Positions 6,646 through 56,651 are shown, counted from the first letter of the stretch. The stretch: DNA of 64,000 nt from Macrostomum lignano (GCA_002269645.1 NIVC01002635.1:1-64000), one strand, 5' to 3'. Notes: generated from the sequence alone by a model not told the origin. Made by a program: numbers and translations.

Positions 6646-6710
<65 letters not shown>

Positions 6711-7407: not shown

Positions 7408-8070
7408 TCACTTTCGCTTCAACGCACGCCTTGTTGGCATAGTTTTTTCCTTCAACTTCGAAAGTCCTTGCAATTTGTTTTGCAATCGTTCAGCGAGCTC
7501 GTCCGGGCATTGTCTCCATTTCGATAGGTTTCCTGCTAATGATTCGAAATCGAAAAAAGTAAGTTTCATTTTTTCTAAATTTCCAGTATTAAAAAGCCAA
7601 TCAGAAAAGTGCCATAGGATAAATTTTAAATTCGGAAATCGAAACTGCTCTGCGACTTTGGTCCTCTCCTCGGATTGAGTCACGGCAATGTGCGTATTCG
7701 TGCCATAGACGCTAAGGAAGTTGCCGCCAAATGCCACTGAGTCCTCGGGGGTGTAGACTGCATGGATCCACCCTGCCAGCACCAGCAAATGTGTTTCTTG
7801 GCTGCAGCACAACACGGTAGACTGGGCCTGTTGCTGTTTCGTCCAGGAAAGCATCCGAGTCGGCAGCTTGCCAGTGCTCATATGCGCGGATGTTTCGCTC
7901 AGTAGGCAGCATTAGATAAGAAATTTTACAGCCGCTGGCTAGCGTGAACTAAAAGTCGCTTCCACCTAGATCTATGTGAAAATTGGTAAATGATTTCTTC
8001 GCACTGATCAGCACTGATTCGGGAAGAGCTGTGTCTAAGCGGCATAAATTATTAATGCTAAATTTGGCAT
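7408..8070 (-). pseudogene. JmjC histone demethylase-like pseudogene copy 1 (KDM2/KDM7-PHF8 type)
   Basis: LISAKKSFTNFHIDLGGSDF*FTLASGCKISYLMLPTERNIRAYEHW ... GWIHAVYTPEDSVAFGGNFL ... EERTKVAEQFRFP. One TAG at a Trp-equivalent codon and one frameshift. Confidence 0.85.
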
Positions 8071-8520
8071 TCGGAAATACCGACAGTCTCGCTAATCACA
8101 GCGACGGTAATGTTTGGATCCTCGTCCACCAGAGCCCTGACAGCAGCGATGTTGGCTTCGGTCACAGCTGTGCTGGGTCGTCCAAACCGGGGGTCGTCGT
8201 TCAAGGAGGCCCGTCCGGCGTTGATGGACTCTATCCACCTGGCGACCGTGCGATAGGAAGGGGCTTGGTCCCCGACTACCTGGACCAGGTCTGCATGGAT
8301 TTTGACCGCGCTTTCTCCGAGTCGTGAGCGCATGAAAACGAAAAATCGCCACTGGTCTGGTGCACTGGCTCCATTTTTGGCAGATTGTAAAACACCACCT
8401 TGCGTTGGCCACGCACAAGTATAACACATTCGAGGGAAAAAAGTCATACTCTATGGTTAAAACCAATATATCGGCGATTTCGTAAAAAAAAATTCAACGC
8501 TTTGTGATATGTACTTTTAA
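8068..8520 (-). mobile_element. mariner transposase 5' fragment (HTH DNA-binding region only)
   Basis: GESAVKIHADLVQVVGDQAPSYRTVARW...GRASLNDDPRFGRPSTAVT...VRALVDEDPNITV; truncated against the JmjC sequence; its TIR lies beyond the LINE at 14370-14394. Confidence 0.85.
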
Positions 8521-8687
8521 AGATATTAGGTCTTGACTTACTTGACTTAGCTGCAGGGGGCGTCCGGCGGATGCAGCGAGGAGGCGGAGGAGACCGCCCA
8601 TTCCGCTAGCCCCTGGCGACCAACGACTTCCGTTGAAGTGGTGTCGCTCAGGGGGACCCGTCGGTCTCGCCTGCAGCGCGGTCCTCC

Positions 8688-11600
8688 TCACCGACGAAGA
8701 AGAGGAGTGGGGAAGAAATCAGCTCGTCCGGTGTCCCTGAGGTACCGGGCGAGCAGTGGGATGCTCTCGGGCCTGCAAACGTCGGAGAGAACCGGGTTTG
8801 GCCCGAGGTGAGTAAGCCTGGCCCTGGTGAAAACCGGGCAGTGGCAGATAAAATGCTCGGCGTTTTCACTGCCTGAGCGGCAGAAGGGGCACCGCTCCTC
8901 GGGTACTTGGCCCTGAAGGAAGCGGTGGCGAGAGAAGCAGCCATGCCCGGAGAGGGCCATGCTAACTGCTCTGAGGTCTCTGCGGTTGAGCCTGAGGAGG
9001 GCTCTACGCAGGAGAGGAGAGGGACAGGGGACGGCAGCACGGGATTGCCTACAATTCCGGGTGTCGTGCCACCTGCGGAGATGCTCGGAGTCAGCCCAGC
9101 GCTTAACGCGGGAATTGATCACCGAGGCGGGGATGGGGGCACCCGGGCCCGGCCCCAATAGCGCGCCGGCGGAGCCAGCCTTGGCCAGCAGGTCAGCGCG
9201 CTCGTTGCCGAGGAAGCCGGCGTGGCCCGGGATCCATCTGAGCTCCACCTGGTTGCCTAGCGCAAGCCCGTTGAGCTGGGTGTTGCAGTCCAGGACGGAC
9301 CTGGAGCTGGCGGTGCTGCGGCAGAGGGCCCGAAGGGCTGCTTGGCTGTCAGAGTGAAAAATAAATTTCCGGCCGCTAAGCTGCCTTCGGCGCAGCTCTG
9401 CCGCGCAGGAGCTGATGGCAAGCACCTCGCTCTGAAAAACACTGGAGTTGAGCCCAGTGTGCTGGGAGTAGCTCCACACCACTTCTCCCTTGAAGAAGAC
9501 GCAAGCTCCGAAGCCTGAAAGACCATGCCTCATAGAGCCGTCAGTGTAACAGTGGACTTCAGAGTCGCTCCAGCTGTCACTCGCCTCGTGTCGAGGCTGA
9601 ATGGTGACCTTATACCTTTGGCTCAGGAGAAGGGTGGCTGGGATCGAGTCCGTGAGGATGTTGAGCCCGCCACACTCCTCGAGAGCCTTGAGGCAGAGGT
9701 CAGAGTGCGGGATAAGCGACCGCTTCTTAAAGGCCCGCACTTTCTTGAAGGCCACCCCAGCATCCAGAAGACGCCGGGTGCTCTTCGCCGCCTCTCCTTT
9801 GATATAAATATCCAAAGGAGGGGCGCAGAGGAAGGCATTCATGCCTTCAAAAGGAGTAGAGGGTGGAGCGCCCATAGTCATGCGGCAGGCTCTGCCCTGG
9901 ATTTTGTAGAGAGCGTCGAGGTTGCTCTTGACGCTCAGGCCGCTAGCCCACACGAGGCTGGCGTAACTGATCGAGGGGCGGATGATGGCAGTGTAAATCC
10001 ACCACAGCTTCCTGGGGGTGAGCCCCCAGGTGGTGCCCACGGCGCGCCTGATCTGAGCCAGTACAGCCAGGGCTTTTTTGGCTTTAGTTTGAATGTGCGG
10101 AGTCCAGTTAAGCCTGTGGTCCAGAGTGAGGCCCAGGCAGCGGACCTGCTTCTCCATGGAAATATTCTTTCCATAGAGGGTGAGGGGCTTAATGGTCCAG
10201 AGCAGTTTGTTGGTAAACATGACTGCTGTGGTTTTCGACTCTGAGAGTCTAAGGCCACATTGGTCTGCCCAACGCTCCGCTCGTCCCAGAAAGCCCTGCA
10301 GAAGGTCTCTGATGGTATCAACCGAGGGGCCCGCGCATATCGCGGTCACATCATCGGCATAGCCCACCTTGAGAATGGGGTCGTGGAGATCACTGCAAAG
10401 CAACTCATCCATGACCATGTTCCAGAGAACGGGGGTGAGAACGCCGCCCTGGGGGCCCCCTTTCAGGACAGGCACCGAAAGAGAGCTGCCGCTCAGGTGG
10501 GCCACAACAGTGCGGTTTCGGATCATGAACATGATCCACCGGACAAGGTGAGGGTGCGTGGCCCTGGATTCCAGGGCTCTGCAAAAGGCCTCGAAGATGA
10601 CGTTGTCGAAGGCCCCCTCAATGTCCAGGAAAAGCGAGAGGGCAAAGCCGCTGCCAAGAACGGCCCTCTCCAGGAAGTCAACAATGACATGGAGAGCACT
10701 CTCGGTTGACCTGCCCGCGCGGAAGGCGTGCTGGTTCTGCGAGAGTGGGAAGCGCTTCAGCTCGACCGAAAGTAGGCGCCAAAGCACCAGTCTCTCGAGG
10801 AGCTTGAGGCAGAAAGAAGTGAGGCTGATAGGCCTGAAGGCCTTCACCGATTGGTAGTCGCTCTTTCCAGGCTTGGGGATAAAGACCACCCGGGCCTCTC
10901 TCCATGCAACTGGTACATAGCCCAGCTCCATACAAGCTCGAAGGAGACGACAGAGCAGGTCCAGGAAGCGGTGGTTTTTCACCGCCTCGTGCAAGAACGC
11001 TGGGTAGATGCCGTCGGGCCCAGGCGCCTTGAACGGGTTAAAGGACCTTGCCGCTCTAATAATGCGGTCTTTGGTGATCATAGACTTTGCTAGGCCTTGC
11101 CCTCCCACTGTGTGGTCGGGCGGGCCCTGCTGAGTCGGAGATTTAGGGAAAAAACTGTTGAGCATGAGCTCTAGAGTCTCTTCCGAACTCTCTGTGACCG
11201 AGCCGTCAGGTCTCTTCACAACAGAGAGTTTAGAAAAACGGTCATTAGTGAGTGCCTTAACCACGCGGGCTACGGGGCGAGAGCCCTCAAGCCCTTCGCA
11301 ATATTGGCGCCACTTGGCCGTCTTGGCCCTTCTGACTTGGCCCTTAAACTCGTGGATCGCACGGGTATAGGCCTCTCTGTCAGATGGGTCTTTGGTTTTG
11401 AGCGCTCGCCTTTGGAGGGTCCTGGCTCGGCGCCGAAGGGCCCCGAGCTCTGGGTTCCACCAGGGAGCAGATTTCTTGCCTTTATAGGCCTTTAGGGGGC
11501 AGGCTGCTTCAAAGGCAGTGGTGATCGCCCCGCCCAGGGAGGAGGCGAGATCGTCCACCACCTGGCAGTCAGAGAGGTCACTGGGGGGTCAAGATCCCGA

Positions 11601-12361
11601 AGGCCGCGGCTCAGCTTCGAGCCAAAGGCGGCCCAATCGGTGTTTCTGACGTTCCGACTCCAAGTGACCTTAGGCTTTTGCTTGGTCGGCCCAATGCAAA
11701 AGCGGATAAAGCGGTGGTCCGAGAGCGAGTCCTCGTCCCACACTCGCCAGCCCGTAACTGCGGAAAGCAGTCCGGGTGAGGCGATGGTGGTGTCGATGAC
11801 TTCGGCCCACCGCCCATTATTGAACGTTGGTGCATTGCCCACGTTACAGAAGTTGAGGTTAGTGCTGCTGACATAGGCCAGCAGCTCCTCGCCTCTGCTA
11901 TTGATGTTCTTGCTGCCCCAATGCAGGTGGTGTGCGTTCACATCCCCTGCAATGAGCAGCTCGAACCGATGGGACGCAGCATAGTCAGTAAGGTTGACTA
12001 ACGCGTCGCAGACAACTGGGGCATCGCCCGGGAAATAGGCAGAAGCTACCAGCACAGGTTTATTGGGAATGAGGTTATTGATTTGAACAACACAGATGTC
12101 CCCAGTCGAGAGATCAGGTCTCATCCATGCCTCAAAAGCTTTTGCAGCAAAGACCAGAGATCTTGGGCGAGGCTGAGAGCCCGCCATGCAAAAACAGTGG
12201 TAGCCAGATGGCACATTATTTGGCTTACCTTTAGTCATCCAGGGCTCCTGTACGAAGACCAGGCCCGGAAGCTGTTGCTCTGCCGTGCGCATCAGGTTGA
12301 CCGACGCCGCCACGCAGTGCTGGGTGTTGATCTGCAGACACCAGGTAGTCGTTGGCATCAT
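8688..12361 (-). CDS. LINE ORF2: AP endonuclease, reverse transcriptase, RNase H and CCHC; one frameshift in a C-run near 11583-11588
   Basis: QINTQHC...VQEPW...AGDVNAHH...SDHRFI (APE); KAPGPDG, GYADD (RT); YTDGS...SEVLAI...SDSQAAL...WIPGHAG...NERAD (RNase H); CPFC...HFICHC. One extra C joins the 289-aa and 957-aa ORFs. Confidence 0.92.
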
Positions 12362-14073
12362 TGCAGATCGGATGTTGCAGCCGCCAGGAGTTCCTCCTCC
12401 TCCTCGGCGCTCACCGGCTTCGGGTCGGGGTCGCCGGTGTCCATGGGCTCTTCTTCAGCAAAAGGCCCCCGATTGGCCGGAAGGCAGTAGGCAGCGTTCG
12501 CCGCCCTTTGCCCACCATCCATGGGGTCCTCCGCCTCAGATTGGCCCAATGCCCTGGAGCAGCCAGCCGCCTGGGCAGGCGGGTCCGTCTCCAGTCGGCC
12601 CTGCCCCGAGGGGTTGGGCCCAGCTGGGACGTCCCCACCCTCCCTGGACGAACTGGTGCGCCTAGGCGTCCCGGCGACCTCTCGCCTCAGCTGGGAGATT
12701 TTGGCGGTACGGACTGCCTCAGCTGCACGCTGGTACAGGCCGCGCCGCTTGGTGCTACGCGCCGGGCGTCGGTCGCCTCCGCCCTCAGCAGCGCGCTCAG
12801 CTTTGCCCGCGCGGCCGTGCTGCCGGGCAGGGCGGTTTGCTTTGGCAGTCTGAGCAGAGGCTTGCGCCTCGGCCCCGGCCGCCTCCGCATCCCGCCCGCC
12901 CTGCTCACTGCCACGGGGAGGGTCGGCCTCGTAGGAGCGGATGCGCAGCTTCCAAAGGCCGACGTTGATGAAGCTGCCGTGTGGATAACGCCTCATCCAG
13001 GCGTCCGACAGCCCCAGGATGGCTGTGAAGCCAGTGCCGTCGGTGCGCTTAAGGGTGTCATGCACCACTAGGCCCGCGGCGGGAAGCTCCCGGTTGACTG
13101 CTAGCAGTCCTTTCCGGAGCTCGTCAGCAGAGGTAACAACGCTCCTGGCCGGGACCCAGATTCGATGCCTCTTGGTCCGGGGGCGCTCGTCCTCTCTGCA
13201 GAAGGCTAGGTTGAGGTCCCAGCTCTGCTCGGGCAGCAGCTCAAGGAGCCGCCGACCCGAGTCAGCATCACTGGGCCAAATGAGAAGGCACGAGTCCCTC
13301 GTCGCATTCGAATGAATGTTCAGAGGCGTGCCCTTCAGAGTTTGCTTCCACAGGAGGCCATCAACGGCACTTCTCACCTGCTTCAGCTGATCGGGAGACA
13401 GGCGCGCGTCCTTTCCCAAGATGACAACCGCCGGTTGCCTCTTTGCCGCATCAGCGTAGGAGGCCCGGGGGTCAGTGGAGCTTTCTTCAGGTGGGCTGTC
13501 CACCCTCCCGGCTGCATCGGCCTCCCTATCCTGGGCAGGGGCTTCCGTGGGCTCGAGACCCTCTTCCGCCACCGCCCCAGACTGGGAAGCTTCCGCTGCC
13601 GCGGGCCGTTGGCCCCTGGCACCGGTTTGGCTTCCGCCCTCCTTGGCCCGCCTCGCCTTGTTAAGTCGACGGCGGGCAGCTCCAGAGGTGGTGCTGCGTT
13701 TCTTAGCAGCTGGAGTAGCAGGTGTCTTCTCGGAGGCACCGCTCAGAGTTGGCTCCACGGGTCTCGCCGAGGCGTCCCCGATGGTAGCAGGTGGTATGGC
13801 CGAGGAGTCCACGGCCCCAGCCGAGGCCGGAGGCACTGTGTCATCCACAGCCGGTTTGTTACTTCGGTTAGAAGCCATTGGCTGGAAGTAAAAAGGTGGG
13901 ACTTCCTGCAGAACACAGGCAAAGAGCCGCAAGGCCGCAACCCCAAACCAAGCGGCAGGCCCCCAAAAAGCAAAATACCACCCTGCGGGGGACCCAAAAG
14001 CGCAAGGGGAACCGTTAGCGACCAGACTACTCCCTGGCCAAGCGTCCATCAGCACGGAGTTACACTGGGACAT
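12358..14073 (-). CDS. LINE ORF1 (gag-like, no CCHC knuckle seen); overlaps the ORF2 start as ATGA
   Basis: 571-aa ORF directly upstream of ORF2 inside the TSD-bounded element; low-complexity basic ends around a globular core. The true start may be the internal Met (MASNRSNK). Confidence 0.8.
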   Translation of the reverse strand: MSQCNSVLMDAWPGSSLVANGSPCAFGSPAGWYFAFWGPAAWFGVAALRLFACVLQEVPPFYFQPMASNRSNKPAVDDTVPPASAGAVDSSAIPPATIGDASARPVEPTLSGASEKTPATPAAKKRSTTSGAARRRLNKARRAKEGGSQTGARGQRPAAAEASQSGAVAEEGLEPTEAPAQDREADAAGRVDSPPEESSTDPRASYADAAKRQPAVVILGKDARLSPDQLKQVRSAVDGLLWKQTLKGTPLNIHSNATRDSCLLIWPSDADSGRRLLELLPEQSWDLNLAFCREDERPRTKRHRIWVPARSVVTSADELRKGLLAVNRELPAAGLVVHDTLKRTDGTGFTAILGLSDAWMRRYPHGSFINVGLWKLRIRSYEADPPRGSEQGGRDAEAAGAEAQASAQTAKANRPARQHGRAGKAERAAEGGGDRRPARSTKRRGLYQRAAEAVRTAKISQLRREVAGTPRRTSSSREGGDVPAGPNPSGQGRLETDPPAQAAGCSRALGQSEAEDPMDGGQRAANAAYCLPANRGPFAEEEPMDTGDPDPKPVSAEEEEELLAAATSDLQ

Positions 14074-14396: not shown

Positions 14397-15092
14397 GGAA
14401 CCCTCTCACCCAATTTATGTAATCTGATTTAGACTGATCCTGCGTCTCCTGCGTCTCCTGCGGCTGCTCCTGCTCCAGCTCGGCTGGTCGTAGCGCCTGC
14501 TGCTGCTGCTGCTCCAGCTCGGTTGGTCGTAGCGCCTGCTGCTGCTGCTCGAGCTCGGCCGGTTGTAGCGCCTGCTGCTGCTGCTGCTCGCGCTCGGCCG
14601 GTTGTGCGCCTGCTGCTGCTGCTGCTCGCGCTCGGCCGGTTGTAGCGCCTGCTGCTGCTGCTGCTCGCGCTCGGCCGGTTGTAGCGCCTGCTGCTGCTGC
14701 TGCTGCTGCTGCTGCTCGGCTTGGTGCCACGTTGCAGGATGCGGTGGCAGTGGTCGGCCATTAATAATCTCTGTGCGGGCCACAGCTATATAGGCTCGTG
14801 CGTACTCACGTGCCTGCACTTGATGCTCTTTGCCCTTTATGGGCTTTCCCTTATGCTCATTGAGCTCCGGGTGGTGGCTTCTGTAGTGCGAGCGGAGCAG
14901 GACGCACGCCTCTCTACACACACAGCACATGCCGTGACCAGAGGTAACTGATCGCTCGAAGGTCGCAAACCATAAGGTCGCTGCGTCATCTTCGACGCGA
15001 TGATCTGGGTGTCGACTTCTAGCATGGCATGCCAAGTTGTCTTTTCGCATTTCCGCTTCGCAGATGACGCAGTTTACATGGATTGATGGCAT
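14397..15092 (-). CDS. Unrecognised double zinc-finger-like protein with poly-Q repeat tail, paralog 1 (3' end hit by mariner)
   Basis: CVICEAEMRKDNLACHARSRH ... GMCCVC...RSHYRSHHP ... PPHPATWH; homologous to 24760-25173 and 19261-20854. The repeat tail has a frame slip. Confidence 0.65.
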
Positions 15093-15499
15093 GATCGCTG
15101 TTCGCTGAGGGTGAAAGGTTTCGCACGAACTATTCCTATCCGATTTGCCGGGCAGGAATGTGAAAGAAATATACCAATAGTAAAGATATTAAAAGATTGA
15201 TCGATTTAAATACATTTCAATCTCAATCAAAGACTGATTAATTGAGTGATAATCAGTCAATCAGTCAACCAGTCAATCATTCAATCTGTCAATCAGTCAG
15301 TCAATCATTAAATAAATTAGTCAATCAGTCAATCAGTCAATCAATGTTTTGATGCTGTCCCTCTTTTGTCCTTATTTTGTCTTGGGCCGCCCCCGTGGCC
15401 GACCCACAGGGCCCACCCCCCCGATTTATAATACAGTACAGTAAAAGTTTTTGTAATTTTAGAAAGCTTAATATCAACATTTGAATATGATTGCAATTT

Positions 15500-15553: not shown

Positions 15554-16262
15554 AACGATTTGAGAAATTGAGATTGAAAGCGATTGATTAAATATTGGTT
15601 TTTGCAACGTACACAGGTAAGGAGGGTAAGATTGAAAACAATTGATTACAACTTGGCTTTAACAACATACATAGGTATAGTAGGTAGGAGAGAGAATTAT
15701 AGATTGAGATTGAAAGTTAAACCAAATGTACACAATTCTTGTCCAGTGGTCAAAAGGCAGAATCAGGGGCGGTAGCTAGCTTAGGTAATTGAACGTCAAG
15801 CTAAGTGTACACAGCGTGCACGACTGTGTCACTCACTGTTCAGAAAACGCGGAGAACGTGACCTGCACCATTATGTTGTAATTGGGTGTTGAGATTCGGG
15901 GTCTGAGCTTTTATGTGCAGGGCCTCGAGAATTCTAAGTTTGGCGTCAGTATGGCTTTGGTCAATGATTTTAAAGTGTTCTTCTGGTTTGCAGTCATTGC
16001 AGTTAGTGCATTCAAGGAGGTGAGTTTGTATAGCAGATGGTTTGAGCCAGTGTTCCCTGATCCTCGTGTGTAGGTGTCTTTTGGTTTTCCCCACGTAGGA
16101 GACGCTCTGGTCCACAAAGCAGTTAAATTGGTAGACAACACCTGCACGCAGAGTACAAGGAACACGCGACTTTAATCTGCTAACAAAGTTCCCAATCTTG
16201 TTCGTGTGGAAGACGACCCGGATGTTACGATTGAAAGAGGCAAAGAATTGCCTCTTTCAATT
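15500..16262 (-). mobile_element. Penelope-like element 3' fragment with GIY-YIG endonuclease
   Basis: GVVYQFNC...SYVGKTKRHLHTRIREH...FKII...LRILEALHIK...PNLN, then a 3' UTR. Confidence 0.85.
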
Positions 16263-16271
16263 GCCTGCATT

Positions 16272-16365
16272 GTAATTTTGATAGGTTATCTGCTAATTAT
16301 TCGAAATCAATCAAATCGGCCACTTTCGCTTCAACGCACGCCTTGTTGGCACAGTTTTTTCCTTT
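16272..16365 (-). pseudogene. Short copy of the JmjC gene 3' end
   Basis: Near-identical to 7365-7450 (KEKTVPTRRALKRK and the downstream flank). Confidence 0.7.
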
Positions 16366-16605
16366 AACTCCTTAATTTCGACAATTTATTCATACTATAC
16401 TAATTGATAATTAAAAGAGCAGCGTGTATTGCGATAAAATTTAGACTGATATAAAATAATTACATAAAAAATTATTGAAATATTAATAATAAGCACAGGA
16501 TTCAAACAAGCAAACAATAAGCATACAAGTAAGCAAACAAATAAGTAAATATTTTACATTATATAGTATTAGTATATACATTATGCATTATGCGTTATAT
16601 ATACA

Positions 16606-16902: not shown

Positions 16903-17175
16903 CCTAGTCCCTGGCGTTCTTGATTGCCTCTTGAAATTGACAAGTCCAACGGAGAAGCATCACTGGCGCCAGGCGGATCGCTTGCTTCTTCGAGATCGGC
17001 CCAAATTTGCTCCCGTTGACATCTTCTCCCTGTAAGCTGTCGGGCTAGGGTAGATCGGGCTTTGGCTTGTAGGATCACGGTAGAGTACAAAATTTCGAAT
17101 CTTGTTTTCGATGATCCTCCTAACTCGACGTTCGACTTTCGTTCGACGTTCGACGTTCGACGTTCGACGTTCCAT
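16903..17175 (-). pseudogene. Unrecognised ~78-aa family, copy 1 (frameshifted)
   Basis: RRIIENKIRNFVLYR..TSQSPIYPSPTAYREK [1-nt loss] NGSKFGPISKKQAIRLAPVMLLRWTCQFQEAIKNARD; the 5' end has a 7-nt (CGTTCGA) expansion. Confidence 0.6.
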
Positions 17176-17559
17176 TGCTGATGAGCAGAAAATTTGTTAA
17201 AAGGAGAATAGCTGGTAAAGGCACACGAAGGCTCGAATAAACTAAATATCCTAAGTAGTATCTCGAGTGTATGCTTAAGAAAATAATTTTCGCCCAGAAA
17301 ATTGTCTGCGCAGCAGATAGGCAGGCATATTTGGAGTGAGAAAGTATTTGAGCACAGTTTAGCAGCGGCTTGGCCTGAATGCGCTCACAAAAACTGAACT
17401 TCCACTTTGCTTCAGCTGTACAAATTCATTGCAGGGTTGCGAGTTGCAGCAACTCCACTGTACACGGGGTGTTCTGAACTTCTCCCTGTCTGTGTTCGTT
17501 TCACGTTCATTTTGTTTATTCGTCCGAGTTTCACACCCGCGGAAAAACTGCGCTGTTCG

Positions 17560-17962
17560 CGTGAAGAACGCGTTCGCCTCCCGATATCTACGACGGCATG
17601 AGTTCGTCTGCGAATATGCTGGCGAGCTTATAGAGTCGCGAAAGTTCATTGACCAGCGTGTCGAGCACTACGAACAACATGGCCTCGACACCTGGTACAT
17701 TTGTGAGGTTGTGCATCACTAAAAAAACTACGCGATTGACGCGCAGTACACCGAGCGACTCGGCCGCTTTCTGAATCACTCAAGGAGAAGTCCGAACTGT
17801 GTTGCCAGAATCATTTCAGTGCCTGTGGCCGACAAAACGTGCCGCTTCGCACTCTACTTCATTACGAATCGTGCGGTCGATAAGGGCGAGGAACTGCTGT
17901 TTGATTACGGCCCAAATGACCGAGAGACAATTGAAGCATGCACATGGCTTATTGACTGTTAA
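17560..17962 (+). pseudogene. SET-domain methyltransferase-like copy 1 (SETD8/PR-Set7 type), one in-frame stop
   Basis: AFASRYLRRHEFVCEYAGELI ... *KNYAIDAQYTERLGRFLNHSRRSPNC ... GEELLFDYGPNDRETIEACTWL; TAA at 17720-17722. Confidence 0.85.
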
Positions 17963-18043
17963 ATGTTGTTGCCTGACCCTAAAAATTGCTCATACTAATT
18001 TCGCAGCGCTTGGCGCCCCCCATGCACTTGCTGCTAATGCTTG

Positions 18044-18935
18044 AGCTACACCAACGGCTCCATTATTTCTAACGCTTACCTATTCTAATTTTTACCTACT
18101 CGATACCTTCTTAACAAATGATGCTGCACCATTTATGACGAGGTGACAACAAACAATGAAACTCAATCTGAAACGTGCGAAATTTAACAGTCCCAGACTT
18201 CTATTGTTCCTATAATATTTGAAACAGCGAGACAAGGCCTCCTTCAGAGCAGGCCCATAGAAATTTTCTGGTGCCCAAGCTAATATTGACTTTTAGGGGA
18301 TTAACACATACGGGCCTAATTTTGCGCTCGATTCCTAAATATTTACACGTTGCTAACTGAGCGCAGGGCTACAACATAAAACTGAACATAATGCGTAAAT
18401 AAGCGAAAATCGGTATCCTACGGGCCAACAAGCGCAAAATTCGATACGCTAAGCGGGAGGGAATTAAGCAATCACGGTCAAATGGTCAATCCACCACTCA
18501 GCGGGGTTTAAAAGGGAGACTGACTACTAGTAAATAGACCTTCTCGGTTCTGTAATCTATGATTGAGTGCCAGCTAGAAAAGCTGACGGCCTGCGTGTGA
18601 AAACATTCAAGGCTTATTTCTGAAAGTCATTTAGTTCCAATCTATTGTTACTATGGTTGAAGGTTACAGTTGAGGGACTTTCTATTCATAGATTTTCCAA
18701 TAATTGCTTGTGTTGTTAACCTTTAAAATTCGTCCAGATTTGTTACTATTTGGCTATGACGCATTAACTCTGCTAGTTTCGTATCACCATTGTCTTGTAA
18801 ACTTTTGGCAATACTAATTGCTTAAATGGCTTTCGACAAGCATAAACAACACTTTGGTCAAACGCTGTTGTTATGTCATGCAGGCGCACATGGAGATCAA
18901 TATTTATGCATACATAAACAGAGTCAAATATAGAC
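18044..18935. repeat. About 890-bp dispersed repeat, inverted copy at 34784-35686
   Basis: High end-to-end reverse-complement identity by eye; apparently non-coding. Confidence 0.85.
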
Positions 18936-19260
18936 CCTAACCCTACCCTAACCCTAACCCTAACCCTAGATTCCCACAGTTGACAATGACCCGCCGCTCA
19001 TAACGATGATCCATAATATGACCGCAGATCTCCCAGATCCATATTTTACATCTATATATTTAGCCAGACTGGTGAAATATCATCCCTAGCTAACACTTTA
19101 TTCCCAGTAGACATTTTATTCCCAGCAGCCAATTTAGCTCCAACTAACAATCCTCAGCTGAAATTTCAAACAGAATTTTATTTGCCTTTGTAAATCTCAA
19201 AGTGTCCAATTATTTGTATATATTATACTACAATTGTAATTAATTATACGAAGAGCTTAC

Positions 19261-20854: not shown

Positions 20855-21080
20855 TTTCGTGCAAAGAAATTACTTAACTTCGATTTTACTGCGAGTGCCT
20901 TTACTTATATACCCTAACTCTAACCATGACCCTAAATTTTTAGGAGTTGCCAACCAATAGGAACTTGCCAACCAATCTTGCCAACCAATAGGAACTTGCC
21001 AACCAATCTTGCCAACCAATAGGAAATGTCTCGCTTAGCAGTCAGCCAAAAGGCAATAATTAATTATCAATCTCACACCC

Positions 21081-31700: not shown

Positions 31701-32665
31701 GTTATGGAGCTCACTTTTCTGTATTTAGTTTGAGCCGCTCTAACGGCCTCAAAAAGCGTTCTCAGGGACTCAAAAAGCGTTCTCGGGGACTCAAAAAGCG
31801 TTCTCAGGGACTCAAAAAGCAAAAAGCGTTCTCAGGGACTCAAAAAGCGTTCTCAGGGACTCAAAAAGCGTTCTCAGGGACTCAAAAAGCGTTCTCGGGG
31901 ACTCAAAAAGCAAAAAGCGTTCTCAGGGACTCAAAAAGCAAAAAGCGTTCTCAGGGACTCAAAAAGCGTTCTCAGGGACTCAAAAAGCGTTCTCAGGGAC
32001 TCAAAAAGCGTTCTCAGGGACTCAAGAAGCGTTCTCAGGGACTCAAAAAGCGTTCTCAGGGACTCAAAAAGCGTTCTCAGGGACTCAAAAAGCGTTCTCA
32101 GGGACTCAAAAAGCGTTCTCAGGGACTCAAAAAGCGTTCTCAGGGACTCAAAAAACGTTCTCAGGGACTCAAAAAGCGTTCTCAGGGACTCAAAAAGCAA
32201 AAAGCGTTCTCAGGGACTCAAAAAACGTTCTCAGGGACTCAAAAAGCGTTCTCAGGGACTCAAAAAGCGTTCTCAGGGACTCAAAAAGCGCTCTCAAGGT
32301 TATGGAGCTCACTTTTCTGTTTTTAGTTTGAGCAGCTCTAACGGCCTCAAAAAGCGTTCTCAGGGACTCAAAAAGCGTTCTCAGGGTTATGGAGCTCACT
32401 TTTCTGTATTTAGTTTGAGCCGCTCTAACGGCATTAAAAACGTTCTCAGGGACTCAAAAAGCGTTCTCAGGGACTCAAAAAGCGTTCTCAGGGACTCAAA
32501 AAGCGTTCTCAGGGACTCAAAAAGCGTTCTCAGGGACTCAAAAAAGCGTTCTCAGGGACTCAAAAAGCGTTCTCAGGGACTCAAAAAGCGTTCTCAGGGA
32601 CTCAAAAAGCGTTCTCAGGGACTCAAAAAGCGTTCTCAGTGTTATGGAGCTCACTTTTCTGTCTG
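25790..32665. repeat. Satellite array: 21-bp unit CTCAAAAAGCGTTCTCAGGGA interspersed with a ~48-bp unit, with higher-order blocks
   Basis: Direct reading; second unit GGTTATGGAGCTCACTTTTCTGTWTTTAGTTTGAGCMGCTCTAACGGC. Confidence 0.97.
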
Positions 32666-34053
32666 TCTTAGTTAACCCTAATGGTGAGTTGCCATGAGTA
32701 CAATTTCCATGAGTTGCGCAGCTCAGCTCATGAGGTAGCCAGCTCACTCACACTTTGGCTGCACAAAAATTTATAAATTTGTACTCAATTGTACTCAATT
32801 GTGCGGCACTATGACGGTTATGCAGCCAGCATCAAACCCCGCCAGCTACCCTCAATTAGAATTTTGTGGGGATCGCTAAAATTTACATACAGTTTTGCTA
32901 CTGCAAGTAGTAATATATAAGTGGATGTTTGTATCTTAGTAAAATTTGTAGTAAAAATTAAAATTGTTAATGTCCAAAACTTGTGAGTTTGAATTCTTGA
33001 CAAATCATATTTTCAGATGTAAAGCCGCTGTCTGTTTTTTCTGCACAAGCTAACCCATTAATGACCTAAATAAAATTCACCAATATCGATCAGTGTAGTC
33101 TGTACTCATCAAGATTGAGTCTGTACCTCACCAGATAAATATCGTTTAGCTGCACCAATAACTTAAACTTTAAATCATAATAACGAGTATCATCAATCAG
33201 CCTTACCGCACGCTACTTACCATTTAAATTTCTTAGAAAATTTAATAAATTTCTTACTAAGTAGCGAGCAGTTCCTGTGTATACTAAACACGCTTAAAAA
33301 TGAGATTATTAACTTGACTACTTGAAAACAATAAACAGGCATAAGCATAATCGCATTTTCATACATGTATAATTCTACAGGCTGAACAGCTAAAATATGA
33401 TGCGATATAAGTATATTTTATAATAAAATGATTAATAAAATGATTAAATCGAAAATGATTAATGAAATAATAAGCAAACGAGGATATACATTATATATTA
33501 TACATTATACATTATATATACATCATACTGCGACCCGAATTTCATGGCCTTCTGACGGCTGCGACGGCTTCGACGGCTCCGATGGCCCATAGGGCGATGG
33601 CCAGATGGCCCAGTCACTGGCCTGAAGAGGCGGCGTTCCTGGCGCCGTAGGCCATGAGAACTCTGGGAGTAAAGATAGCAGAGGTGGGCCGCGTGTTAGA
33701 TAAGAGTTGGCAGCAGTCATTCGTATTTGCCCCCCCCCCTAGATGGGTAGAATCTGGGAAGCAGGGCGTCACTATATTTTGGGAGACTTATTATCATATA
33801 GCGTCTTTTTCTAAGTGAATAATAAGGGGCGTTTGGTTTCAAAATTGTAGATGGCTGACGTTTTTTGTAGTTTTCCGGTCACGGAGACAAAACTTGTCAA
33901 GACATTCTATGATTGCTTGTTTTTTCTTAGTGGTAAAAACTAAGGCGGACGGGCATCTTAATCCTAAAATCTAGCCATTGATCCAAATGAGTCATCTGGT
34001 GACGGGACTTACCAAAAAACGCAGGTCGAAGCTCAGCGCCGAAGTATCGTCAG

Positions 34054-34294
34054 TTAGCCATGTATGGCTTTTTGCCTGGCCTCTTGAAAAAGGCATGTCC
34101 AGAAGTTCAGCATTTCTGGTGCGAGTCGAGTCGCCTGCTTCTTCGATATTGGACCAAATTTAGAGCCGTTGATTGACTACTTTCTCTTGATAGTTTTTAG
34201 GGGTGGGATGGACCGGCTCTCGGCTTCCCGGGCCTCTGTACAGGACGAATTTAATAATTTTCTTTTTTATTACGCGGCGAACAGGTTTGTTCAT
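34054..34294 (-). pseudogene. Unrecognised ~78-aa family, diverged copy 3
   Basis: MNKPVRRVIKKKIIKFVLYRGPGSREPVHPTPKNYQEKV [4-nt duplication] NGSKFGPISKKQATRLAPEMLNFWTCLFQEA; protein-level similarity persists despite DNA divergence. Confidence 0.65.
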
Positions 34295-34783: not shown

Positions 34784-35686
34784 GTCTATATTTGACTATG
34801 TGTATGCATAAATATCGATCTCCATGTGCGCGTGCATGACATAACAACAGCGTTTGACCTTTGAACTTTATGCTTGTCGAAAGCCATTTAAGCAATTAGT
34901 ATTGCCAAAAGTTTACAAGACAATGGTGATACGAAACTAGCAGAGTTAATGCGTCATAGCCAAATAGTAACAAATCTGGACGAATTTTAAAGGTTAACAA
35001 CACAAGCAATTATTGGAAAATATATGAATAGAAAGTCCCTCAACTGTAACCTTCAACCATAGTAACAATAGATTGGAACTAAATGACTTTCAGAAATAAG
35101 CCTTGAATGTTTTCACACGCAGGCCGTTAGGGTCAGGGCAGCGCTTTTCTAGCTGGCACTCACGCAATCATAGACTACAGAACCGAGAAGGTCTATTTAC
35201 TAGTAGTCAGTCTCCCTTTTAACCCCCGCTGAGTGGTGGATTGACCATTTGACCGTGATTGCTTAATTCCCTCCCGCTTAGCGTATCGAATTTTGCACGT
35301 GTTGCCCCGTAGGATACCGATTTTCGCTTATTTACGCATTATGTTCAGTTTTATGTTGTAGCCCTGCGCTCAATTAGCAACGTGTAAATATTTAGGAATC
35401 GAGCGCAAAATTAGGCCCGTATGTGTTAATCCACTAAAAGTCAATATTAGTTTGGGCACCAGAAAATTTCTATGGGCTGCTCTGCAGGAGGCCTTGTCTC
35501 ACTGTTTCAAATTTTATAGGAACAATAGAAGTCTGGGACTGTTAAATTTCGCACGTTTCAGATTGAATTTCATTCTTTGGTTGTCACCTTGTCATAAATT
35601 GTGCAGCATCATTTGTTAAGAAGGTGTCGAGTAGGTAAGAATTAGAATAGGTAAGCGTTAGCAATAATGGAGCCGTTGGTGTAGCT
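34784..35686. repeat. Inverted copy of the 18044-18935 repeat
   Basis: Reverse-complement match by eye. Confidence 0.85.
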
Positions 35687-36289
35687 TAACGGTATTTTGC
35701 GGCCTGGCCCGCGGCCGCGGTCAGTATTTTTTGTTTTACTTATTTACTAAAATAGATTTACATAGGCTAAATAGCGGTCGCCCGGGCCGGGGCGGGCCGT
35801 GAATTACGGATACCAGTAGCTCAAGCATAAACAGCTACTATTGACTTTTAGGGGATTAACAAATACCGTACCGGCCTAATTTTGCATGGCAAGTCCCGCC
35901 ACGAGTAAGGCTCCCAGCAGCGGCGCTTGCCAGGGCGCATCAGCTTCGGCCAGGGGTGCTAGCGGAGGCACTGCTACCACCGGCGCCAACTGAGCCACGG
36001 GCGGCCGGGGGACTGCACACGGTGACAGCGGCGGCGGCACCGGCGGCACATCGGCTCCTGGCGCCGGTGTGCTGGCGGCCCGGCGTTTCCGCAGCCTATA
36101 GGCGCCAGTCCCGTTTCCGCCCTGTTGCGTTTGGGCGGCAGGTCACAAAGGTGTGCAAAGACCCTCTTAAAAGCGTGGGATTCCCCTCCTAAAATTGTGT
36201 AAAGCCCCATCTACAAGCGTGCAAGGCACCTCTCAAAAGTGTGCATAGCCATAACATAAGACATTAGACATTAGATTAACATAAGACAG

Positions 36290-38755: not shown

Positions 38756-38999
38756 CTAGTAGTCCCTGGCGTTCTTGATTGCCTCTTGAAATTGGCAAGT
38801 CCAACGGAGAAGCATCACTGGCGCCAGGCGGATCGCTTGCTTCTTCGAGATCGGCCCAAAGTTGCTCCCGTTGACTATCTTCTCCCTGTAAGCTGTCGGG
38901 CTAGGGTAGATCGGGCTTTGGCTTGTAGCTCGTAGGACCGCGGTAGAGTACAAAATTTCGAATCTTTTTTTTGATGATCCGCCTAACTGAACGTTCCAT
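38756..38999 (-). pseudogene. Unrecognised ~78-aa family, copy 4
   Basis: MERSVRRIIKKKIRNFVLYRGPT [7-nt duplication] SQSPIYPSPTAYREKIVNGSNFGPISKKQAIRLAPVMLLRWTCQFQEAIKNARDY*. Confidence 0.65.
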
Positions 39000-39187
39000 T
39001 GCTGATGAGCAGAAAATTCGTTAAAAGGAGAATAACTGGTAAAGGCACACAGCAGTCAGTGCATTTGACAGCTATCGACTCAATAAACTGGAATTTATAA
39101 CCACAAGTTTCTTCGAGGGTTGACTTTCCCGAAATATGCTTTCTTCTAATTGGTTGATAATTTAGGAGGTATGTAAGAAATTTAGTT

Positions 39188-41379: not shown

Positions 41380-42770
41380 TCATTGGGAATTGCTAAGATG
41401 TCAAGGCTCATGATAGACATTCTAAGATATCGTGTCAAGGTTCAAATTGCTTTGATGTTAAGGTTCATTTAGGAAATTGTTGAGATATCAAAGCTCACTA
41501 AAAATTCTTTGCTGTCAAGGCTCATGAAAATAATTACTGGAATGCTTTGGCTGTTTGGGGAATTGCCTAAATTGTTAGGGTAAGAGTAAGATGTAAACCA
41601 TAAATGAATTTGGCTTTCAAACATAAAATACTCATTGGGTAATTACTAAGAGGTCAAGGCTCATGGGGGATCTGAATTATACTGTGGCTCAATGCTCAGG
41701 GTGAATTGTTGTGATTGCAACACATTGGTATTTTGCAAAATTTTGTCGCTAAAAAGGGGTTGCTGAAATATCATGGCTCATTGGGGAATCGCTGGGATGT
41801 CAAAACTAACGGGGATCCCTATAATGCTGTAGGCTGTGACTCTTGGCCGTCTTGGGTTATTGCAGAGCTTCTTAGGTTCACAGGGAAATGGCTGAGATTT
41901 CAAAGGCTCCTAAAGGAATAGCTTAATTCACGAAATGTCAATGTTCTTTGGGTAATTGTTAAAATGCTGTGGTTCATGGTGAGAATTGCTGAAATGCTGT
42001 CAGTGACTTAGGAGGGTTAGGGTTCAATCATAAGACATCATAAGTGCCAAAATGCCAAGATAACATAGGTTAGTGCCGAGGTTAGTCGTTAAATTTCCAG
42101 GCTCATGTAGAAATTGCTAACATTTCAAAAGCTCATTGGGAAATTTCTGAAATTCGGCTGTAGGTTAAGGCTTGTGGTTTTAGTTCAATTATAGTTATAG
42201 AGCGATGATTTTCGTGTCAATCATAAATGATTCATAGGGGAATTGCTAAGATTAAACGCTCTTGGGGCAAATTATACTTAAATGCTTTGGCTCTACTGGG
42301 AGTCGCCGACAGGTCAAGGCTTTCGGTGAAATTTAGATTACGAAGCTTATGAGGACGTTACTTTAGTGCCGAGGCTCAAGGCTCATGCTGGAACTTGCTA
42401 ACATGCCAAGACTCAGTTATGGGTTAGGGTTGGGGGCTTAGGTGAGCTTTGTTTCAATCATAGATTAACCGCTGTCAACTATCAATTAAAGACTTGCTAA
42501 GATATCAAAGCTCGTGGGGAATCGCTGAGTTAACAAGGCCCATAAAAAATTTGAGTTATCGAGGCTCATAAGGGTATTGCTGAATTTTTGGGAGAGGGGA
42601 GTTGGATTGTTAGAACTTCAAGGCTTACAGCGCTGGTAGAATTGCGAAGATTTCGAGGCTCGAGATCAATTGCTGCGATGTCAAGGCATACTGGCGGAAT
42701 TGCTGAGATATTTCAAGGCTCATGAACGATAGCTGAATTGTTGGGGAGGGGGGTGTTAGGTTATTGGGCG
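41380..42770. repeat. Degenerate interspersed minisatellite (GGAATTGCTAAGATGTCAAGGCTCATG-like)
   Basis: The motif recurs many times with variable spacing; a similar tract lies at about 2540-2680. Confidence 0.6.
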
Positions 42771-44060
42771 ATTGCCAGATAGTCAGGTAGTACGAGCGTA
42801 CGTCTGAAGTAGCGCATGCAATTCAGATAATGAAATAGTACACACAAGTGATGCTGATTTCTGCTAATAGGAAATACCAGCGCATTTATTAAAGATTTGA
42901 TTATCTGCTATAGGCTAATAAAGAGAGAGGGTCTAAAGCCGTCAGGGATTTGCATATTGAGCTCCTGCTGCGGGCCAGAATATGCCCCGGCCAGTGACGA
43001 TGTGCACCAACAGTTTGTGCTTGAAAGGATAAGCTCTATTTGCTGATTGAGAAATGGTTTTGGGCTGAGTGGGAACCTTTTTGGACTGATGAAGATTTTG
43101 ATTCATGGTAATCATGGCAATTTGGTGTCATTTTGAAGGCCCCCAGCGGGGGCTAAATGGCTAGTCTTATACTAATATGCTTGCTCATTTTTGAATCTTA
43201 AGCGCTGAAATATATTCGCTTTGATGGCTTTGCCGATAGAGTTTATTTGTTGTTCCGGTCACCACACCAGGCTCGTATTAATCGAATCATTTTGCTGACC
43301 CCTTGAAGAAGGTGAGCTTTTCAACCCTGTGAGCAAGTCATGAATTTTTAAGTCAGATTTGTTAATAAAATTTGTTAATATTGTCTGATTTTTTCGGCAA
43401 TATCCAACCCATGACTTACATACAACCGCCTCTAACAATCCTTTAATTTCGATGCATGCGGGCAGTGTACTCATCAAGATTGTAAACTTTATCCTCCTCA
43501 CCATTTATATTAGCCTAAAAAATATTTTTTCTCAATGTGCGGTGCTGTGGACTGCCCTAAAGCCGGCCTCGAACTTCAAACCGCCCCTCTATCATCAGAA
43601 TATTGTAGGAATTCCTGCTCGGAAAATTGCAGCAACAACAGTACATACGTACTACGAGCCATACTAGCGTTTAGAGAGTTGTCACTCTCCAATATTGGTT
43701 AAACTTTCCTGTAACAATGTATTGAAATAACATTGTTTAAAATCGCTGTTATCTCTAAGTTAAGCTAAGGCAGTAGCTAAACAGCAAAAAATATGCTGCG
43801 ATATAAGTATATTTTATAATGAAATGATAAATTAAATAATTAAATCGAAAATAATTAATGAAATAATAAGCAAACGAGGAAATACATCATATATGAGACA
43901 TTAATCCATTATATATTATACATTATACATTATATATACATCATACATTATATACGTTACAACATTTTATCAATTTTTGACGAGTACGCAATACGCTGCG
44001 AAATTAGCATGAGCAATGTTTAGCAATGAGCAAAGGTCAGCAACAGTCAACAGTCAACAG

Positions 44061-44423
44061 TCAATATGTACATGCCTCACCTGTCTCTCGATCATTTGGT
44101 CCGTAATCAAAAAGCAGTTCTTCGCCCTTATCCACCACGCGATTTGTAATAAAATAAAGTGCGGGCGGCGCAAGCTTAAAAATGTACCAAGTGTCGAGAC
44201 CACACTGTTGGTAGTGCTCAACACGCTGGTAAATGGTCTTTCGCGACTAGGTTAGCCCGCCAGCATATTCACACACGAATTCATACCGTCGTAGAGATCG
44301 GGAGGCGAACGCCCCCTTCCCCTTATTTCCGGCATCAGCGACGACAACGGCCCTATCGTCACTGGCTATTATAAGGGATATTATATCCGCCTCCGGATTC
44401 CACCGTCTCTTCCTTTTGCGCAT
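44061..44423 (-). pseudogene. SET-domain pseudogene copy 2 with internal deletion
   Basis: GNKGKGAFASRSLRRYEFVCEYAGGLT*SRK...DTWYIFKLAPPALYFITNRVVDKGEELLFDYGPNDRE; lacks the RFLNHS segment present in copy 1. Confidence 0.85.
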
Positions 44424-56649: not shown

Positions 56650-56651
56650 CT

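What the first reader, a model, noticed from the sequence alone, without database searches (positions are those of the whole stretch)
7408..44423. Recurrent chromatin-modifier gene kit (JmjC, SET, zinc finger, small ORF) shuffled in both orientations
Seen: three JmjC pieces, two SETD8-like pieces, four zinc-finger-family pieces and at least four small-ORF copies, with shared non-coding flanks; SET copy 1 is head-to-head with a small ORF. The genes are compact and diverged. Known: KDM2/KDM7-type JmjC proteins remove H3K36/H3K9/H3K27/H4K20 methyl marks and SETD8 writes H4K20me1. Inference: these may be decaying copies of a large mobile element or endogenous virus carrying its own writer and eraser enzymes, perhaps to counter silencing. 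The nearby BEN and RPA-like genes would fit that.
Basis: partly seen in the sequence, partly recalled or inferred. Interest (0 to 1): 0.72.

Follow-up and report, generated by a model that had tools for sequence, protein, structure and literature searches.

The report
Decayed JmjC, SET, zinc-finger gene fragments
A repeat-rich stretch of an animal-like genome holds broken, locally copied and inverted pieces of three small intronless genes (a histone-demethylase-like, a histone-methyltransferase-like and an orphan zinc-finger gene), and nothing in the window shows that a virus or transposon carried them.

Summary
The recurrence is real. There are two substantial KDM2/KDM7-type JmjC copies plus a ~120-bp tail fragment. 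There are two KMT5A/SETD8-type SET copies. An orphan two-finger C2H2 family has three loci: two intact ORFs and one broken copy in two pieces. There are also six kinds of shared non-coding block. The "small ORF" is a ~330-bp non-coding repeat, not a gene. All JmjC and SET copies are dead.

The two JmjC copies (96% identical) share a premature stop, so they were copied as dead DNA. The two SET copies have different breaks and dN/dS of 0.22, so they diverged while functional. The genes are contiguous (no introns), single-domain and keep their catalytic motifs.

The pieces lie in interleaved inverted duplications of unequal age. They are cut by a LINE, mariner and Penelope fragments, and satellites. 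Pfam scans of all sizeable ORFs found no transposase, Rep/helicase, integrase, polymerase or capsid tied to the set. No relatives turned up in IMG/VR contigs, and no element termini were found.

Best reading: a decaying, locally rearranged, lineage-specific gene cluster. Cargo of an undescribed mobile element remains possible but untested, because the source genome could not be searched.

The parts
7357..8067 (-). JmjC copy 1 (KDM2/KDM7/PHF8-like). It carries the C-terminal two-thirds of the gene plus 51 bp of 3' flank. It is 5'-truncated by a mariner/LINE insertion. Breaks: one frameshift and one in-frame stop.
21664..22187 (-). JmjC copy 2. It carries the N-terminal ~170 codons and is 3'-truncated. 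It has two in-frame stops, one of them shared with copy 1.
16269..16388 (-). JmjC tail fragment: the last ~17 codons plus the same 51-bp 3' flank. It ends at the same base as copy 1.
17363..18008 (+). SET copy 1 (KMT5A/SETD8-like). Similarity to copy 2 begins at 17570, so the N-terminal part is lost. It has one in-frame stop.
43994..44525 (-). SET copy 2. It keeps the N-terminal part with a basic stretch. It has one in-frame stop and one internal in-frame deletion of about 43 codons.
14415..15092 (-). Zinc-finger gene a: an intact 225-aa ORF with two C2H2-like fingers and a Q-rich tail made by a 39-bp minisatellite.
24667..25173 (-). Zinc-finger gene b: an intact 168-aa ORF, 42% identical to gene a.
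19255..20869 (-). Zinc-finger copy c, broken. Five matched stretches lie in three reading frames, split by a 1.15-kb insert with a GC-rich core.
16905..17226 (+). It is non-coding.
21080..21285 (-). Repeat R, copy 2. It is 98.5% identical to copy 1 and inverted.
38760..39050 (+). Repeat R, copy 3 (83-93% identity).
34079..34172 (+). Repeat R, copy 4 (73% identity).
15182..15302 (.). Block P, copy 1: a (GATTGACT)n microsatellite plus ~60-80 bp of unique sequence, just 5' of zinc-finger gene a.
22188..22311 (.). Block P, copy 2. It is inverted relative to copy 1 (88.7% identity) and lies just 5' of JmjC copy 2.
16380..16515 (.). Block X, between the JmjC tail fragment and R copy 1.
21297..21484 (.). 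Block X', an inverted copy of X next to R copy 2.
21527..21662 (.). Block Q, abutting the truncated end of JmjC copy 2.
33185..33308 (.). Block Q', an inverted copy of Q (86% identity). It is not JmjC.
33381..33528 (.). Block T.
43776..43928 (.). Block T' (87.6% identity to T), just 3' of SET copy 2.
18041..18935 (.). Block B, copy 1: ~900 bp with no coding signal, 33 bp beyond SET copy 1.
34784..35689 (.). Block B, copy 2. It is inverted and 94% identical to copy 1.
8058..8447 (-). Mariner-type transposase HTH fragment that interrupts JmjC copy 1. It is an unrelated insertion.
8688..14073 (-). LINE with ORF1, endonuclease, reverse transcriptase and RNase H. It lies between JmjC copy 1 and zinc-finger gene a and is an unrelated insertion.
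15843..16256 (-). Penelope-like GIY-YIG fragment abutting the JmjC tail fragment. It is an unrelated insertion.
25927..32639 (.). Satellite with a 21-bp unit (x311) and 86/87-bp higher-order units, separating the two halves of the cluster.

Best explanation
This is the wreck of a small lineage-specific gene cluster lying in repeat-rich DNA. It is not a recognisable virus or transposon.

Three kinds of compact, intronless gene once sat here:
- a ~275-codon JmjC-only relative of the KDM2/KDM7/PHF8 demethylases;
- a ~190-codon SET-only relative of KMT5A/SETD8;
- an orphan protein with two C2H2-like fingers.

Shown:
- Every JmjC and SET copy is now broken; two zinc-finger ORFs are intact.
- The pieces were multiplied by DNA-level duplication and inversion inside this ~37-kb stretch, in several rounds of different age.
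- They were then cut by LINE, mariner and Penelope insertions and by satellite expansion.
- The JmjC pair was copied after the gene was already dead.
- The SET pair and the zinc-finger genes diverged under purifying selection, so they are old paralogues that were once functional.

Inferred:
- The ancestral enzymes were active nuclear proteins. The JmjC Fe(II)-binding residues (HxD...H) and the SET NHS and ELLFDYG motifs are retained, and basic NLS-like stretches lie at the ends.
- The three genes may once have formed a compact ~3-kb module: SET, then JmjC tail-to-tail, then the zinc-finger gene head-to-head.
- Today the JmjC and SET pieces do nothing enzymatic. Only the zinc-finger ORFs could still be expressed as proteins.
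For: Family assignment.

Contiguous coding without introns, across what are multi-exon domains in ordinary KDM2 genes: compared with the exon-wise gene calls.

Break counts.

The premature stop shared by the two JmjC copies shows that dead DNA was copied.

SET copies: NG86 dN/dS = 0.22 over 82 codons, dS = 0.53, binomial p = 1e-4 against neutrality. Zinc-finger a/b: dN/dS = 0.29.

Local duplication with co-copied flanks in both orientations and unequal identities (R 98.5%, JmjC 95.9%, B 94%, P 89%, X 79-87%, SET 79-83%).

Catalytic residues retained: for the JmjC HxD and second His; alignment for the SET motifs.

No mobile-element or viral hallmark protein tied to the set. No viral relatives.
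Against: - Compact, intronless, single-domain chromatin enzymes in several paralogues amid transposon debris are also what mobile-element or viral cargo would look like.
- JmjC copy 1 and the tail fragment end at exactly the same base, 51 bp past the stop, with unrelated DNA beyond. That hints at a discrete unit boundary.
- SET and RPA-like genes are documented cargo of some Helentron-type elements (PMC4067079), and an RPA-like fragment lies 4 kb away.
- Genome-wide copy number could not be measured.
- The closest database relatives of the JmjC are only 37-58% identical, so no host orthologue was available for comparison.
Confidence: 0.55

Rival explanations
1. The pieces are fragments of an undescribed multicopy mobile element, for example a Helentron-type rolling-circle transposon or another large DNA transposon. 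Its cargo would be a SET writer, a JmjC eraser and a zinc-finger protein, perhaps used against chromatin silencing. This window would hold only dead, rearranged remnants without the element's own enzyme.
For: - The genes are compact and intronless, and the SET and zinc-finger paralogues diverged under purifying selection, as subfamilies of an active element would.
- Two JmjC pieces share a discrete 3' boundary.
- There are fragments with different truncation points.
- Precedent: an intronless ~153-aa SET ORF in a Phytophthora proto-Helentron, and RPA genes in Helentrons (PMC4067079).
- An RPA-like fragment lies at 1993-3305.
- Fungal DNA transposons carry TET/JBP dioxygenases (PMC12730594, listed).
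Against: - No Rep/helicase, no transposase tied to the set and no termini in 64 kb.
- The most similar copies share a disabling stop and their flanks, which fits segmental duplication.
- The documented Helentron SET is SUV39/Clr4-like, not SET8-like.
- No element with both a JmjC and a SET gene turned up in the literature searches.
Confidence: 0.25
2. Captured host gene fragments: transposons (Helitron-type or Pack-type capture, or LINE-mediated retrocopying) picked up parts of the host KDM7 and KMT5A messages and scattered them.
For: - The coding sequence is contiguous, as in retrocopies.
- One piece is 5'-truncated with a common 3' end.
- The region is dense with retroelements.
Against: - There are no poly(A) tails at the shared 3' end.
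- The JmjC ORF stops shortly after the catalytic domain, with its own basic tail, rather than continuing as host KDM2/7 proteins do.
- The SET copies evolved under constraint for a long time, which captured fragments would not.
Confidence: 0.1
3. Remnant of an endogenous large DNA virus (giant virus, herpes-like or Maverick/Polinton-like) that encoded its own histone methyltransferase and demethylase.
For: - The genes are small, intronless and single-domain.
- Minimal viral SET enzymes are known (chlorella virus vSET, from my own knowledge).
- The inverted duplications could be read as terminal inverted repeats.
Against: - No capsid, packaging ATPase, DNA polymerase, integrase or primase in any ORF scanned.
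- No relatives in 2.9 million IMG/VR contigs, even with a profile of the most conserved JmjC motifs.
- The inverted arms have very unequal identities (79-98.5%) and interleave rather than bound a unit.
- Base composition of the pieces matches the 40-45% GC background.
Confidence: 0.04
4. Functional host genes whose apparent breaks are introns or assembly errors.
For: - Two zinc-finger ORFs are intact.
- Catalytic motifs are preserved.
Against: - In-frame stops lie inside conserved domain sequence.
- One stop is shared by two copies.
- Truncations abut transposon insertions.
- One SET copy has an internal deletion of its core.
- Long transposon ORFs read through cleanly with the standard code, so a variant genetic code is not the cause.
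Confidence: 0.03

Closest known systems
KDM7/PHF8/KDM2 JmjC lysine demethylases
   Same: The best structural-database matches are C. elegans KDM7 (2.5e-15), then PHF8, KDM2A and KDM7. The Fe(II) ligands HxD and the second His in the GWIHAV motif are retained in both copies.
   Different: This gene is about 275 codons and JmjC-only. It has no PHD, CXXC, F-box or LRR parts, which ordinary KDM2 genes do have. It has no introns. It is only 37-58% identical to the nearest database proteins. All copies are broken.
KMT5A/SETD8 (SET8) H4K20 monomethyltransferase
   Same: Pfam SET hit, with the best PDB hits being SET8-type proteins. The NHS and ELLFDYG motifs are present, and the protein ends right after the SET domain, as SET8 does.
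   Different: The N-terminus is short and basic, and there are no introns. Two diverged paralogues lie within 27 kb, and both are broken. Substrate specificity is untested.
Helentron and proto-Helentron rolling-circle transposons carrying SET or RPA genes (Thomas, Vadnagara and Pritham 2014, PMC4067079)
   Same: An intronless ~150-aa SET ORF carried as transposon cargo, and RPA70-like ORFs in Helentrons. Here a small SET gene lies within about 15 kb of an RPA-like fragment.
   Different: That SET is SUV39/Clr4-like and sits beside a Rep/helicase. Here the SET is SET8-like, no Rep/helicase or Helitron-type ends are present, and a JmjC gene is not part of any described Helentron.
Fungal DNA transposons encoding TET/JBP dioxygenases (PMC12730594; KDZ elements)
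   Same: A mobile element carrying a 2-oxoglutarate dioxygenase that erases a silencing mark.
   Different: The enzyme family (DNA rather than histone demethylation) and the kingdom differ. Those genes lie next to transposase genes, and none is linked here.
Locally duplicated pseudogene clusters in repeat-rich or heterochromatin-like DNA
   Same: A mosaic of fragments in both orientations, shared disabling mutations, nested transposon insertions and satellites.
   Different: The genes involved are unusual: compact writer-type and eraser-type enzymes plus an orphan zinc-finger family.

Membership tests
JmjC KDM2/KDM7 demethylases | JmjC (cupin) domain recognisable by sequence | tested here: met
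   PDB phmmer gives E 2e-12 and 2.5e-15. Pfam JmjC is only 0.0017, below the curated cutoff.
JmjC KDM2/KDM7 demethylases | Fe(II) ligands: HxD/E plus a distal His | tested here: met
   FH.D and GWIHAV align to the same motifs of the database relatives in both copies.
JmjC KDM2/KDM7 demethylases | Accessory reader or targeting domains (PHD, or CXXC + F-box + LRR) | tested here: not met
   No such domain was found in any ORF around the copies. The ordinary KDM2 loci fetched do have them.
JmjC KDM2/KDM7 demethylases | Intact reading frame and demethylase activity | tested here: not met
   Every copy is truncated and carries stops or a frameshift. Activity is not testable here.
KMT5A/SETD8 methyltransferases | SET domain with the cofactor-binding NHS motif and the C-terminal ELxFDYG motif | tested here: met
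   Pfam SET 2e-10, and 1.6e-12 across both pieces of copy 1.
KMT5A/SETD8 methyltransferases | Orthology with host KMT5A, and H4K20 specificity | not testable with these tools
   The source genome was not available, and the word-index search returned nothing.
Endogenous large DNA virus or Maverick/Polinton | Hallmark genes: capsid, packaging ATPase, DNA polymerase, integrase | tested here: not met
   Pfam scans of ORFs of 40 aa or more in 15.1-45.1 kb and of 55 aa or more in the flanks gave none.
Endogenous large DNA virus or Maverick/Polinton | Relatives of the cargo genes in viral genomes | tested here: not met
   Four IMG/VR scans gave no confirmed relative. The method mainly finds close relatives or relatives that conserve the motifs.
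Endogenous large DNA virus or Maverick/Polinton | Terminal inverted repeats bounding one unit | tested here: inconclusive
   Inverted pairs exist but interleave and differ widely in identity.
Helitron/Helentron or other DNA transposon with cargo | Rep/helicase or a transposase inside the unit | tested here: not met
   None was found. The Merlin-type transposase at 3802-4980 and the mariner fragment are separate insertions, and no terminal repeats enclose the set.
Helitron/Helentron or other DNA transposon with cargo | Many dispersed copies with common ends and insertion polymorphism | not testable with these tools
   No eukaryotic genome collection was on hand. The metagenome scan with the R pattern gave only chance hits.
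Local segmental duplication of pseudogenes | Disabling mutation shared by copies | tested here: met
   One premature stop lies at the homologous codon of JmjC copies 1 and 2. It is not met for the SET pair, whose breaks differ.
Local segmental duplication of pseudogenes | Non-coding flanks copied along with the gene pieces | tested here: met
   Blocks P, X, Q, T, B and R recur next to the gene pieces.

The most novel reading that the evidence does not exclude
The SET, JmjC and zinc-finger genes once formed a compact ~3-kb three-gene module (SET, JmjC tail-to-tail, zinc finger head-to-head). On this reading the module belongs to an undescribed multicopy mobile element of an animal genome. It would be the first element known to carry both a histone-lysine methyl writer and a KDM2/7-type eraser, plausibly to reshape chromatin at its own copies. 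This window would show only its dead, rearranged remains.
Probability: 0.15. Interest if true: 0.7.

Novelty: new member of a known kind. Interest (0 to 1): 0.3.

Why it matters
As it stands, this is an ordinary kind of object: a decaying, locally duplicated gene cluster in repeat-rich DNA. It warns against reading recurrence inside one window as mobility.

Its gene content is less ordinary. The JmjC and SET genes are intronless and stripped to the catalytic domain, and they sit with an orphan zinc-finger family that has no relatives among 1.84 billion representative proteins. If intact, expressed members exist elsewhere in the genome, they would be lineage-specific minimal chromatin enzymes worth studying. 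If the three genes travel together on an element, that would be a new way for selfish DNA to interact with host silencing.

Tried and rejected
Identifying the source:
- Exact-product look-ups of five window ORFs found nothing.
- Rfam and tRNA scans found nothing.

Finding relatives:
- The word-index protein searches gave only distant ordinary KDM2 exons for the JmjC and nothing for the zinc finger or SET. The SET query of 79 aa was too short for that tool, so that search was wasted.
- The exhaustive profile search for the zinc-finger family returned 11 weak hits, all generic multi-C2H2 proteins.
- The AlphaFold model of zinc-finger gene b had mean pLDDT 46.6, so no fold search was run.
- The metagenome scan with a degenerate R-repeat pattern gave four chance matches.
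- IMG/VR scans were negative.

Ideas rejected:
- The 'small ORF' as a gene. There is no codon periodicity and the indels are not multiples of three.
- The piece at 33185-33308 as JmjC. It is only a flank repeat.
- One simple palindrome or element with terminal inverted repeats. The arms interleave and their identities are unequal.
- Block B as part of the SET unit. It is 94% identical between copies against ~81% for the adjacent SET, and it lies 8 kb from the second SET copy.
- The Merlin-type transposase as the set's transposase. It is 2.4 kb away and no enclosing repeats were found.
- A variant genetic code as the cause of the stops. Long transposon ORFs are clean under the standard code.

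Literature searches for elements carrying JmjC plus SET found only the Helentron SET precedent.


Full report
CONTEXT. The window reads as an animal-type, repeat-rich eukaryotic region with a 38-46% GC background and islands of 54-64% GC. It contains:
- an apparently intact LINE, with ORF1 at 12358-14073, endonuclease at 11492-12361, and reverse transcriptase plus RNase H at 8688-11561;
- a mariner HTH fragment at 8058-8447;
- a Merlin/IS1595-type transposase ORF at 3802-4980, and a Penelope-like GIY-YIG fragment at 15843-16256;
- a young LTR retrotransposon at 50136-57350;
- further LINE fragments at 57.4-60.8 kb;
- several satellites, the largest a 21-bp unit repeated 311 times at 25927-32639.
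No tRNA or Rfam family is present. The source organism could not be identified: five exact-product look-ups found nothing.

THE OBSERVATION. A self-comparison of the window at DNA level and at protein level confirms the recurrence.
- JmjC: copy 1 (7357-8067, - strand) and copy 2 (21664-22187, -) share 341 bp at 95.9%. A ~120-bp tail fragment lies at 16269-16388. The pieces match PHF8, KDM2A, KDM7 and the C. elegans KDM7 homologue at E 2e-12 to 2.5e-15.
- SET: copy 1 (17363-18008, +) and copy 2 (43994-44525, -) are 79-83% identical. They match Pfam SET and SET8/KMT5A structures.
- Zinc finger: there are two intact ORFs (14415-15092 and 24667-25173; 42% identical, E 5e-23) and a broken third copy within 19255-20869.
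- The 'small ORF' is a ~330-bp repeat, R, with four copies at 73-98.5% identity.
- Five further non-coding blocks (P, X, Q, T, B) recur next to the gene pieces.
- The stretch at 33185-33308, which continues the open frame of JmjC copy 2, is block Q and has no JmjC similarity.
- The RPA-like neighbour is real (REPA_OB_2, 6e-11). The BEN neighbour got no Pfam support.

STATE OF THE GENES.
- JmjC copy 1: 5'-truncated by transposon insertion, one frameshift and one in-frame stop.
- JmjC copy 2: 3'-truncated, two in-frame stops.
- The third JmjC piece is only the tail.
- SET copy 1: N-terminal part lost, one in-frame stop.
- SET copy 2: one in-frame stop and one internal in-frame deletion of about 43 codons.
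- Zinc-finger copy c: five matched stretches in three frames, split by a 1.15-kb insert.
- Zinc-finger genes a and b are intact.
The Fe(II) ligands of the JmjC fold (HxD and the distal His) are retained in both copies. SET copy 1 keeps the NHS and ELLFDYG motifs. The ancestors were therefore probably active enzymes. This is an inference.

GENE ARCHITECTURE. Both enzyme genes are contiguous: the database JmjC proteins align without intron-sized gaps. Put together, the pieces imply a JmjC-only protein of about 275 codons and a SET-only protein of about 190 codons, each with a short basic stretch at one end. Ordinary KDM2 loci fetched for comparison carry CXXC, F-box and LRR parts next to the JmjC. 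No such domain is near the copies here. The nearest database JmjC proteins are only 37-58% identical over part of the query. The zinc-finger family has no relatives beyond generic C2H2 similarity in an exhaustive search of 1.84 billion representative proteins. It has no Pfam or PDB match, and its AlphaFold model was unusable.

HOW THE COPIES AROSE. Three lines of evidence bear on this.
1. JmjC copies 1 and 2 share a premature stop at the homologous codon. That duplication therefore copied an already dead gene, together with flanking DNA.
2. The SET copies carry different breaks and differ mostly at synonymous sites: dN/dS = 0.22 over 82 codons, dS = 0.53, p = 1e-4 against neutrality. The zinc-finger a/b pair gives 0.29 with saturated dS. 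These are old paralogues that diverged while under selection and died, or survived, separately.
3. The blocks form interleaved inverted pairs. One pair is P-X-R at 15182-17110 against R-X'-P at 21080-22311. The other is SET-B at 17570-18935 against B at 34784-35689 and SET at 43994-44312. Their identities range from 79% to 98.5%. That means several events, not one palindrome or one pair of terminal repeats.
Repeat R shows no codon periodicity (28/31/21 mismatches by codon position, p = 0.37), and its copies differ by indels of 1, 7 and 4 bp. It is not a gene.

HINTS OF AN OLDER UNIT. Block P lies just 5' of zinc-finger gene a and, inverted, just 5' of JmjC copy 2. This would fit a former head-to-head pair with about 230 bp between the genes. 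Chaining the shared flanks (SET copy 2 to T, T to Q at 33.2-33.5 kb, Q to JmjC copy 2 to P, P to zinc-finger gene a) gives a hypothetical ~3-kb module. Each junction is seen only once, so the support is weak. JmjC copy 1 and the tail fragment end at exactly the same base, 51 bp past the stop, with unrelated DNA beyond and no poly(A). This is a discrete boundary that I cannot explain.

TESTING THE CARRIER. Three Pfam scans covered all ORFs of 40 aa or more in the non-satellite parts of 15.1-45.1 kb and of 55 aa or more in the flanks, with stops marked by X. They returned only SET within the set. They returned no transposase, Rep/helicase, integrase, polymerase, packaging ATPase or capsid. Four scans of IMG/VR found no relative of any of the three proteins; one of them used a profile of the most conserved JmjC motifs. 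A metagenome scan with the R pattern gave only chance hits. The one relevant precedent in the literature is a Phytophthora proto-Helentron that carries an intronless ~153-aa SET ORF, together with Helentrons that carry RPA genes (PMC4067079). That SET is Clr4-like and lies beside a Rep/helicase, which is absent here. A review of giant eukaryotic transposons mentions no histone-modifying cargo. Fungal transposons with TET/JBP dioxygenases are the nearest analogue of an 'eraser on a transposon' (PMC12730594, listed).

VERDICT. The best-supported reading (about 0.55) is a decaying, locally duplicated and inverted cluster of lineage-specific, intronless JmjC-only, SET-only and orphan zinc-finger genes, overrun by transposons and satellites. 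Cargo of an undescribed mobile element stays open (about 0.25), because copy number and linkage outside this window could not be examined. Captured or retrocopied host fragments (about 0.1), an endogenous large DNA virus (about 0.04) and live genes with apparent breaks (about 0.03) are less likely. The object is a new member of a known kind, and interest is modest unless a genome-wide census shows that the three genes travel together.

Noticed in passing
window 50136-57350: A young LTR retrotransposon with 705-bp LTRs that are 99.4% identical. Its pol ORF ends just after the integrase zinc finger. The next 570-aa ORF (51081-52793) shows no integrase core. Instead it has a J-domain (DnaJ; PDB DNAJB13, 6e-5) and a weak TatD-DNase-like stretch.
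   Followed up: partly
window 39187-40132: A foldback or MITE-like element with 271-bp inverted arms (39187-39457 and 39862-40132) that are 99.3% complementary around a ~400-bp core. It lies next to R copy 3.
   Followed up: no
window 1993-3305 and 3802-4980: RPA70-like OB-fold fragments (REPA_OB_2, 6e-11) lie beside an intact 392-aa Merlin/IS1595-type transposase ORF. RPA-like genes are known Helitron/Helentron cargo, but no Rep/helicase is in the window.
   Followed up: partly
window 8688-14073: An apparently intact LINE with ORF1, endonuclease, RT and RNase H. It is 58-64% GC in a 40-45% GC background and is inserted between JmjC copy 1 and zinc-finger gene a.
   Followed up: partly
window 14457-14704 and 6696-6853: A 39-bp CAG-rich minisatellite forms the glutamine-rich C-terminal tail of zinc-finger gene a. 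It recurs, inverted, about 500 bp beyond the 3' end of JmjC copy 1.
   Followed up: no
window 25927-32639, 36288-37412, 22518-22783: A 6.7-kb satellite with a 21-bp unit and 86/87-bp higher-order repeats, a 1.1-kb (AGAGG)n array, and a perfect 14-bp x19 array. All give long spurious ORFs on both strands.
   Followed up: no
window 15093-15420 and 25174-25560: Upstream of zinc-finger genes a and b lies a shared ~70-bp GC-rich segment followed by a (GATTGAYW)n microsatellite. It may be the tail of a retroposon.
   Followed up: no
window 46047-48852: A run of minus-strand ORFs of 140-190 aa has no Pfam match.
   Followed up: partly
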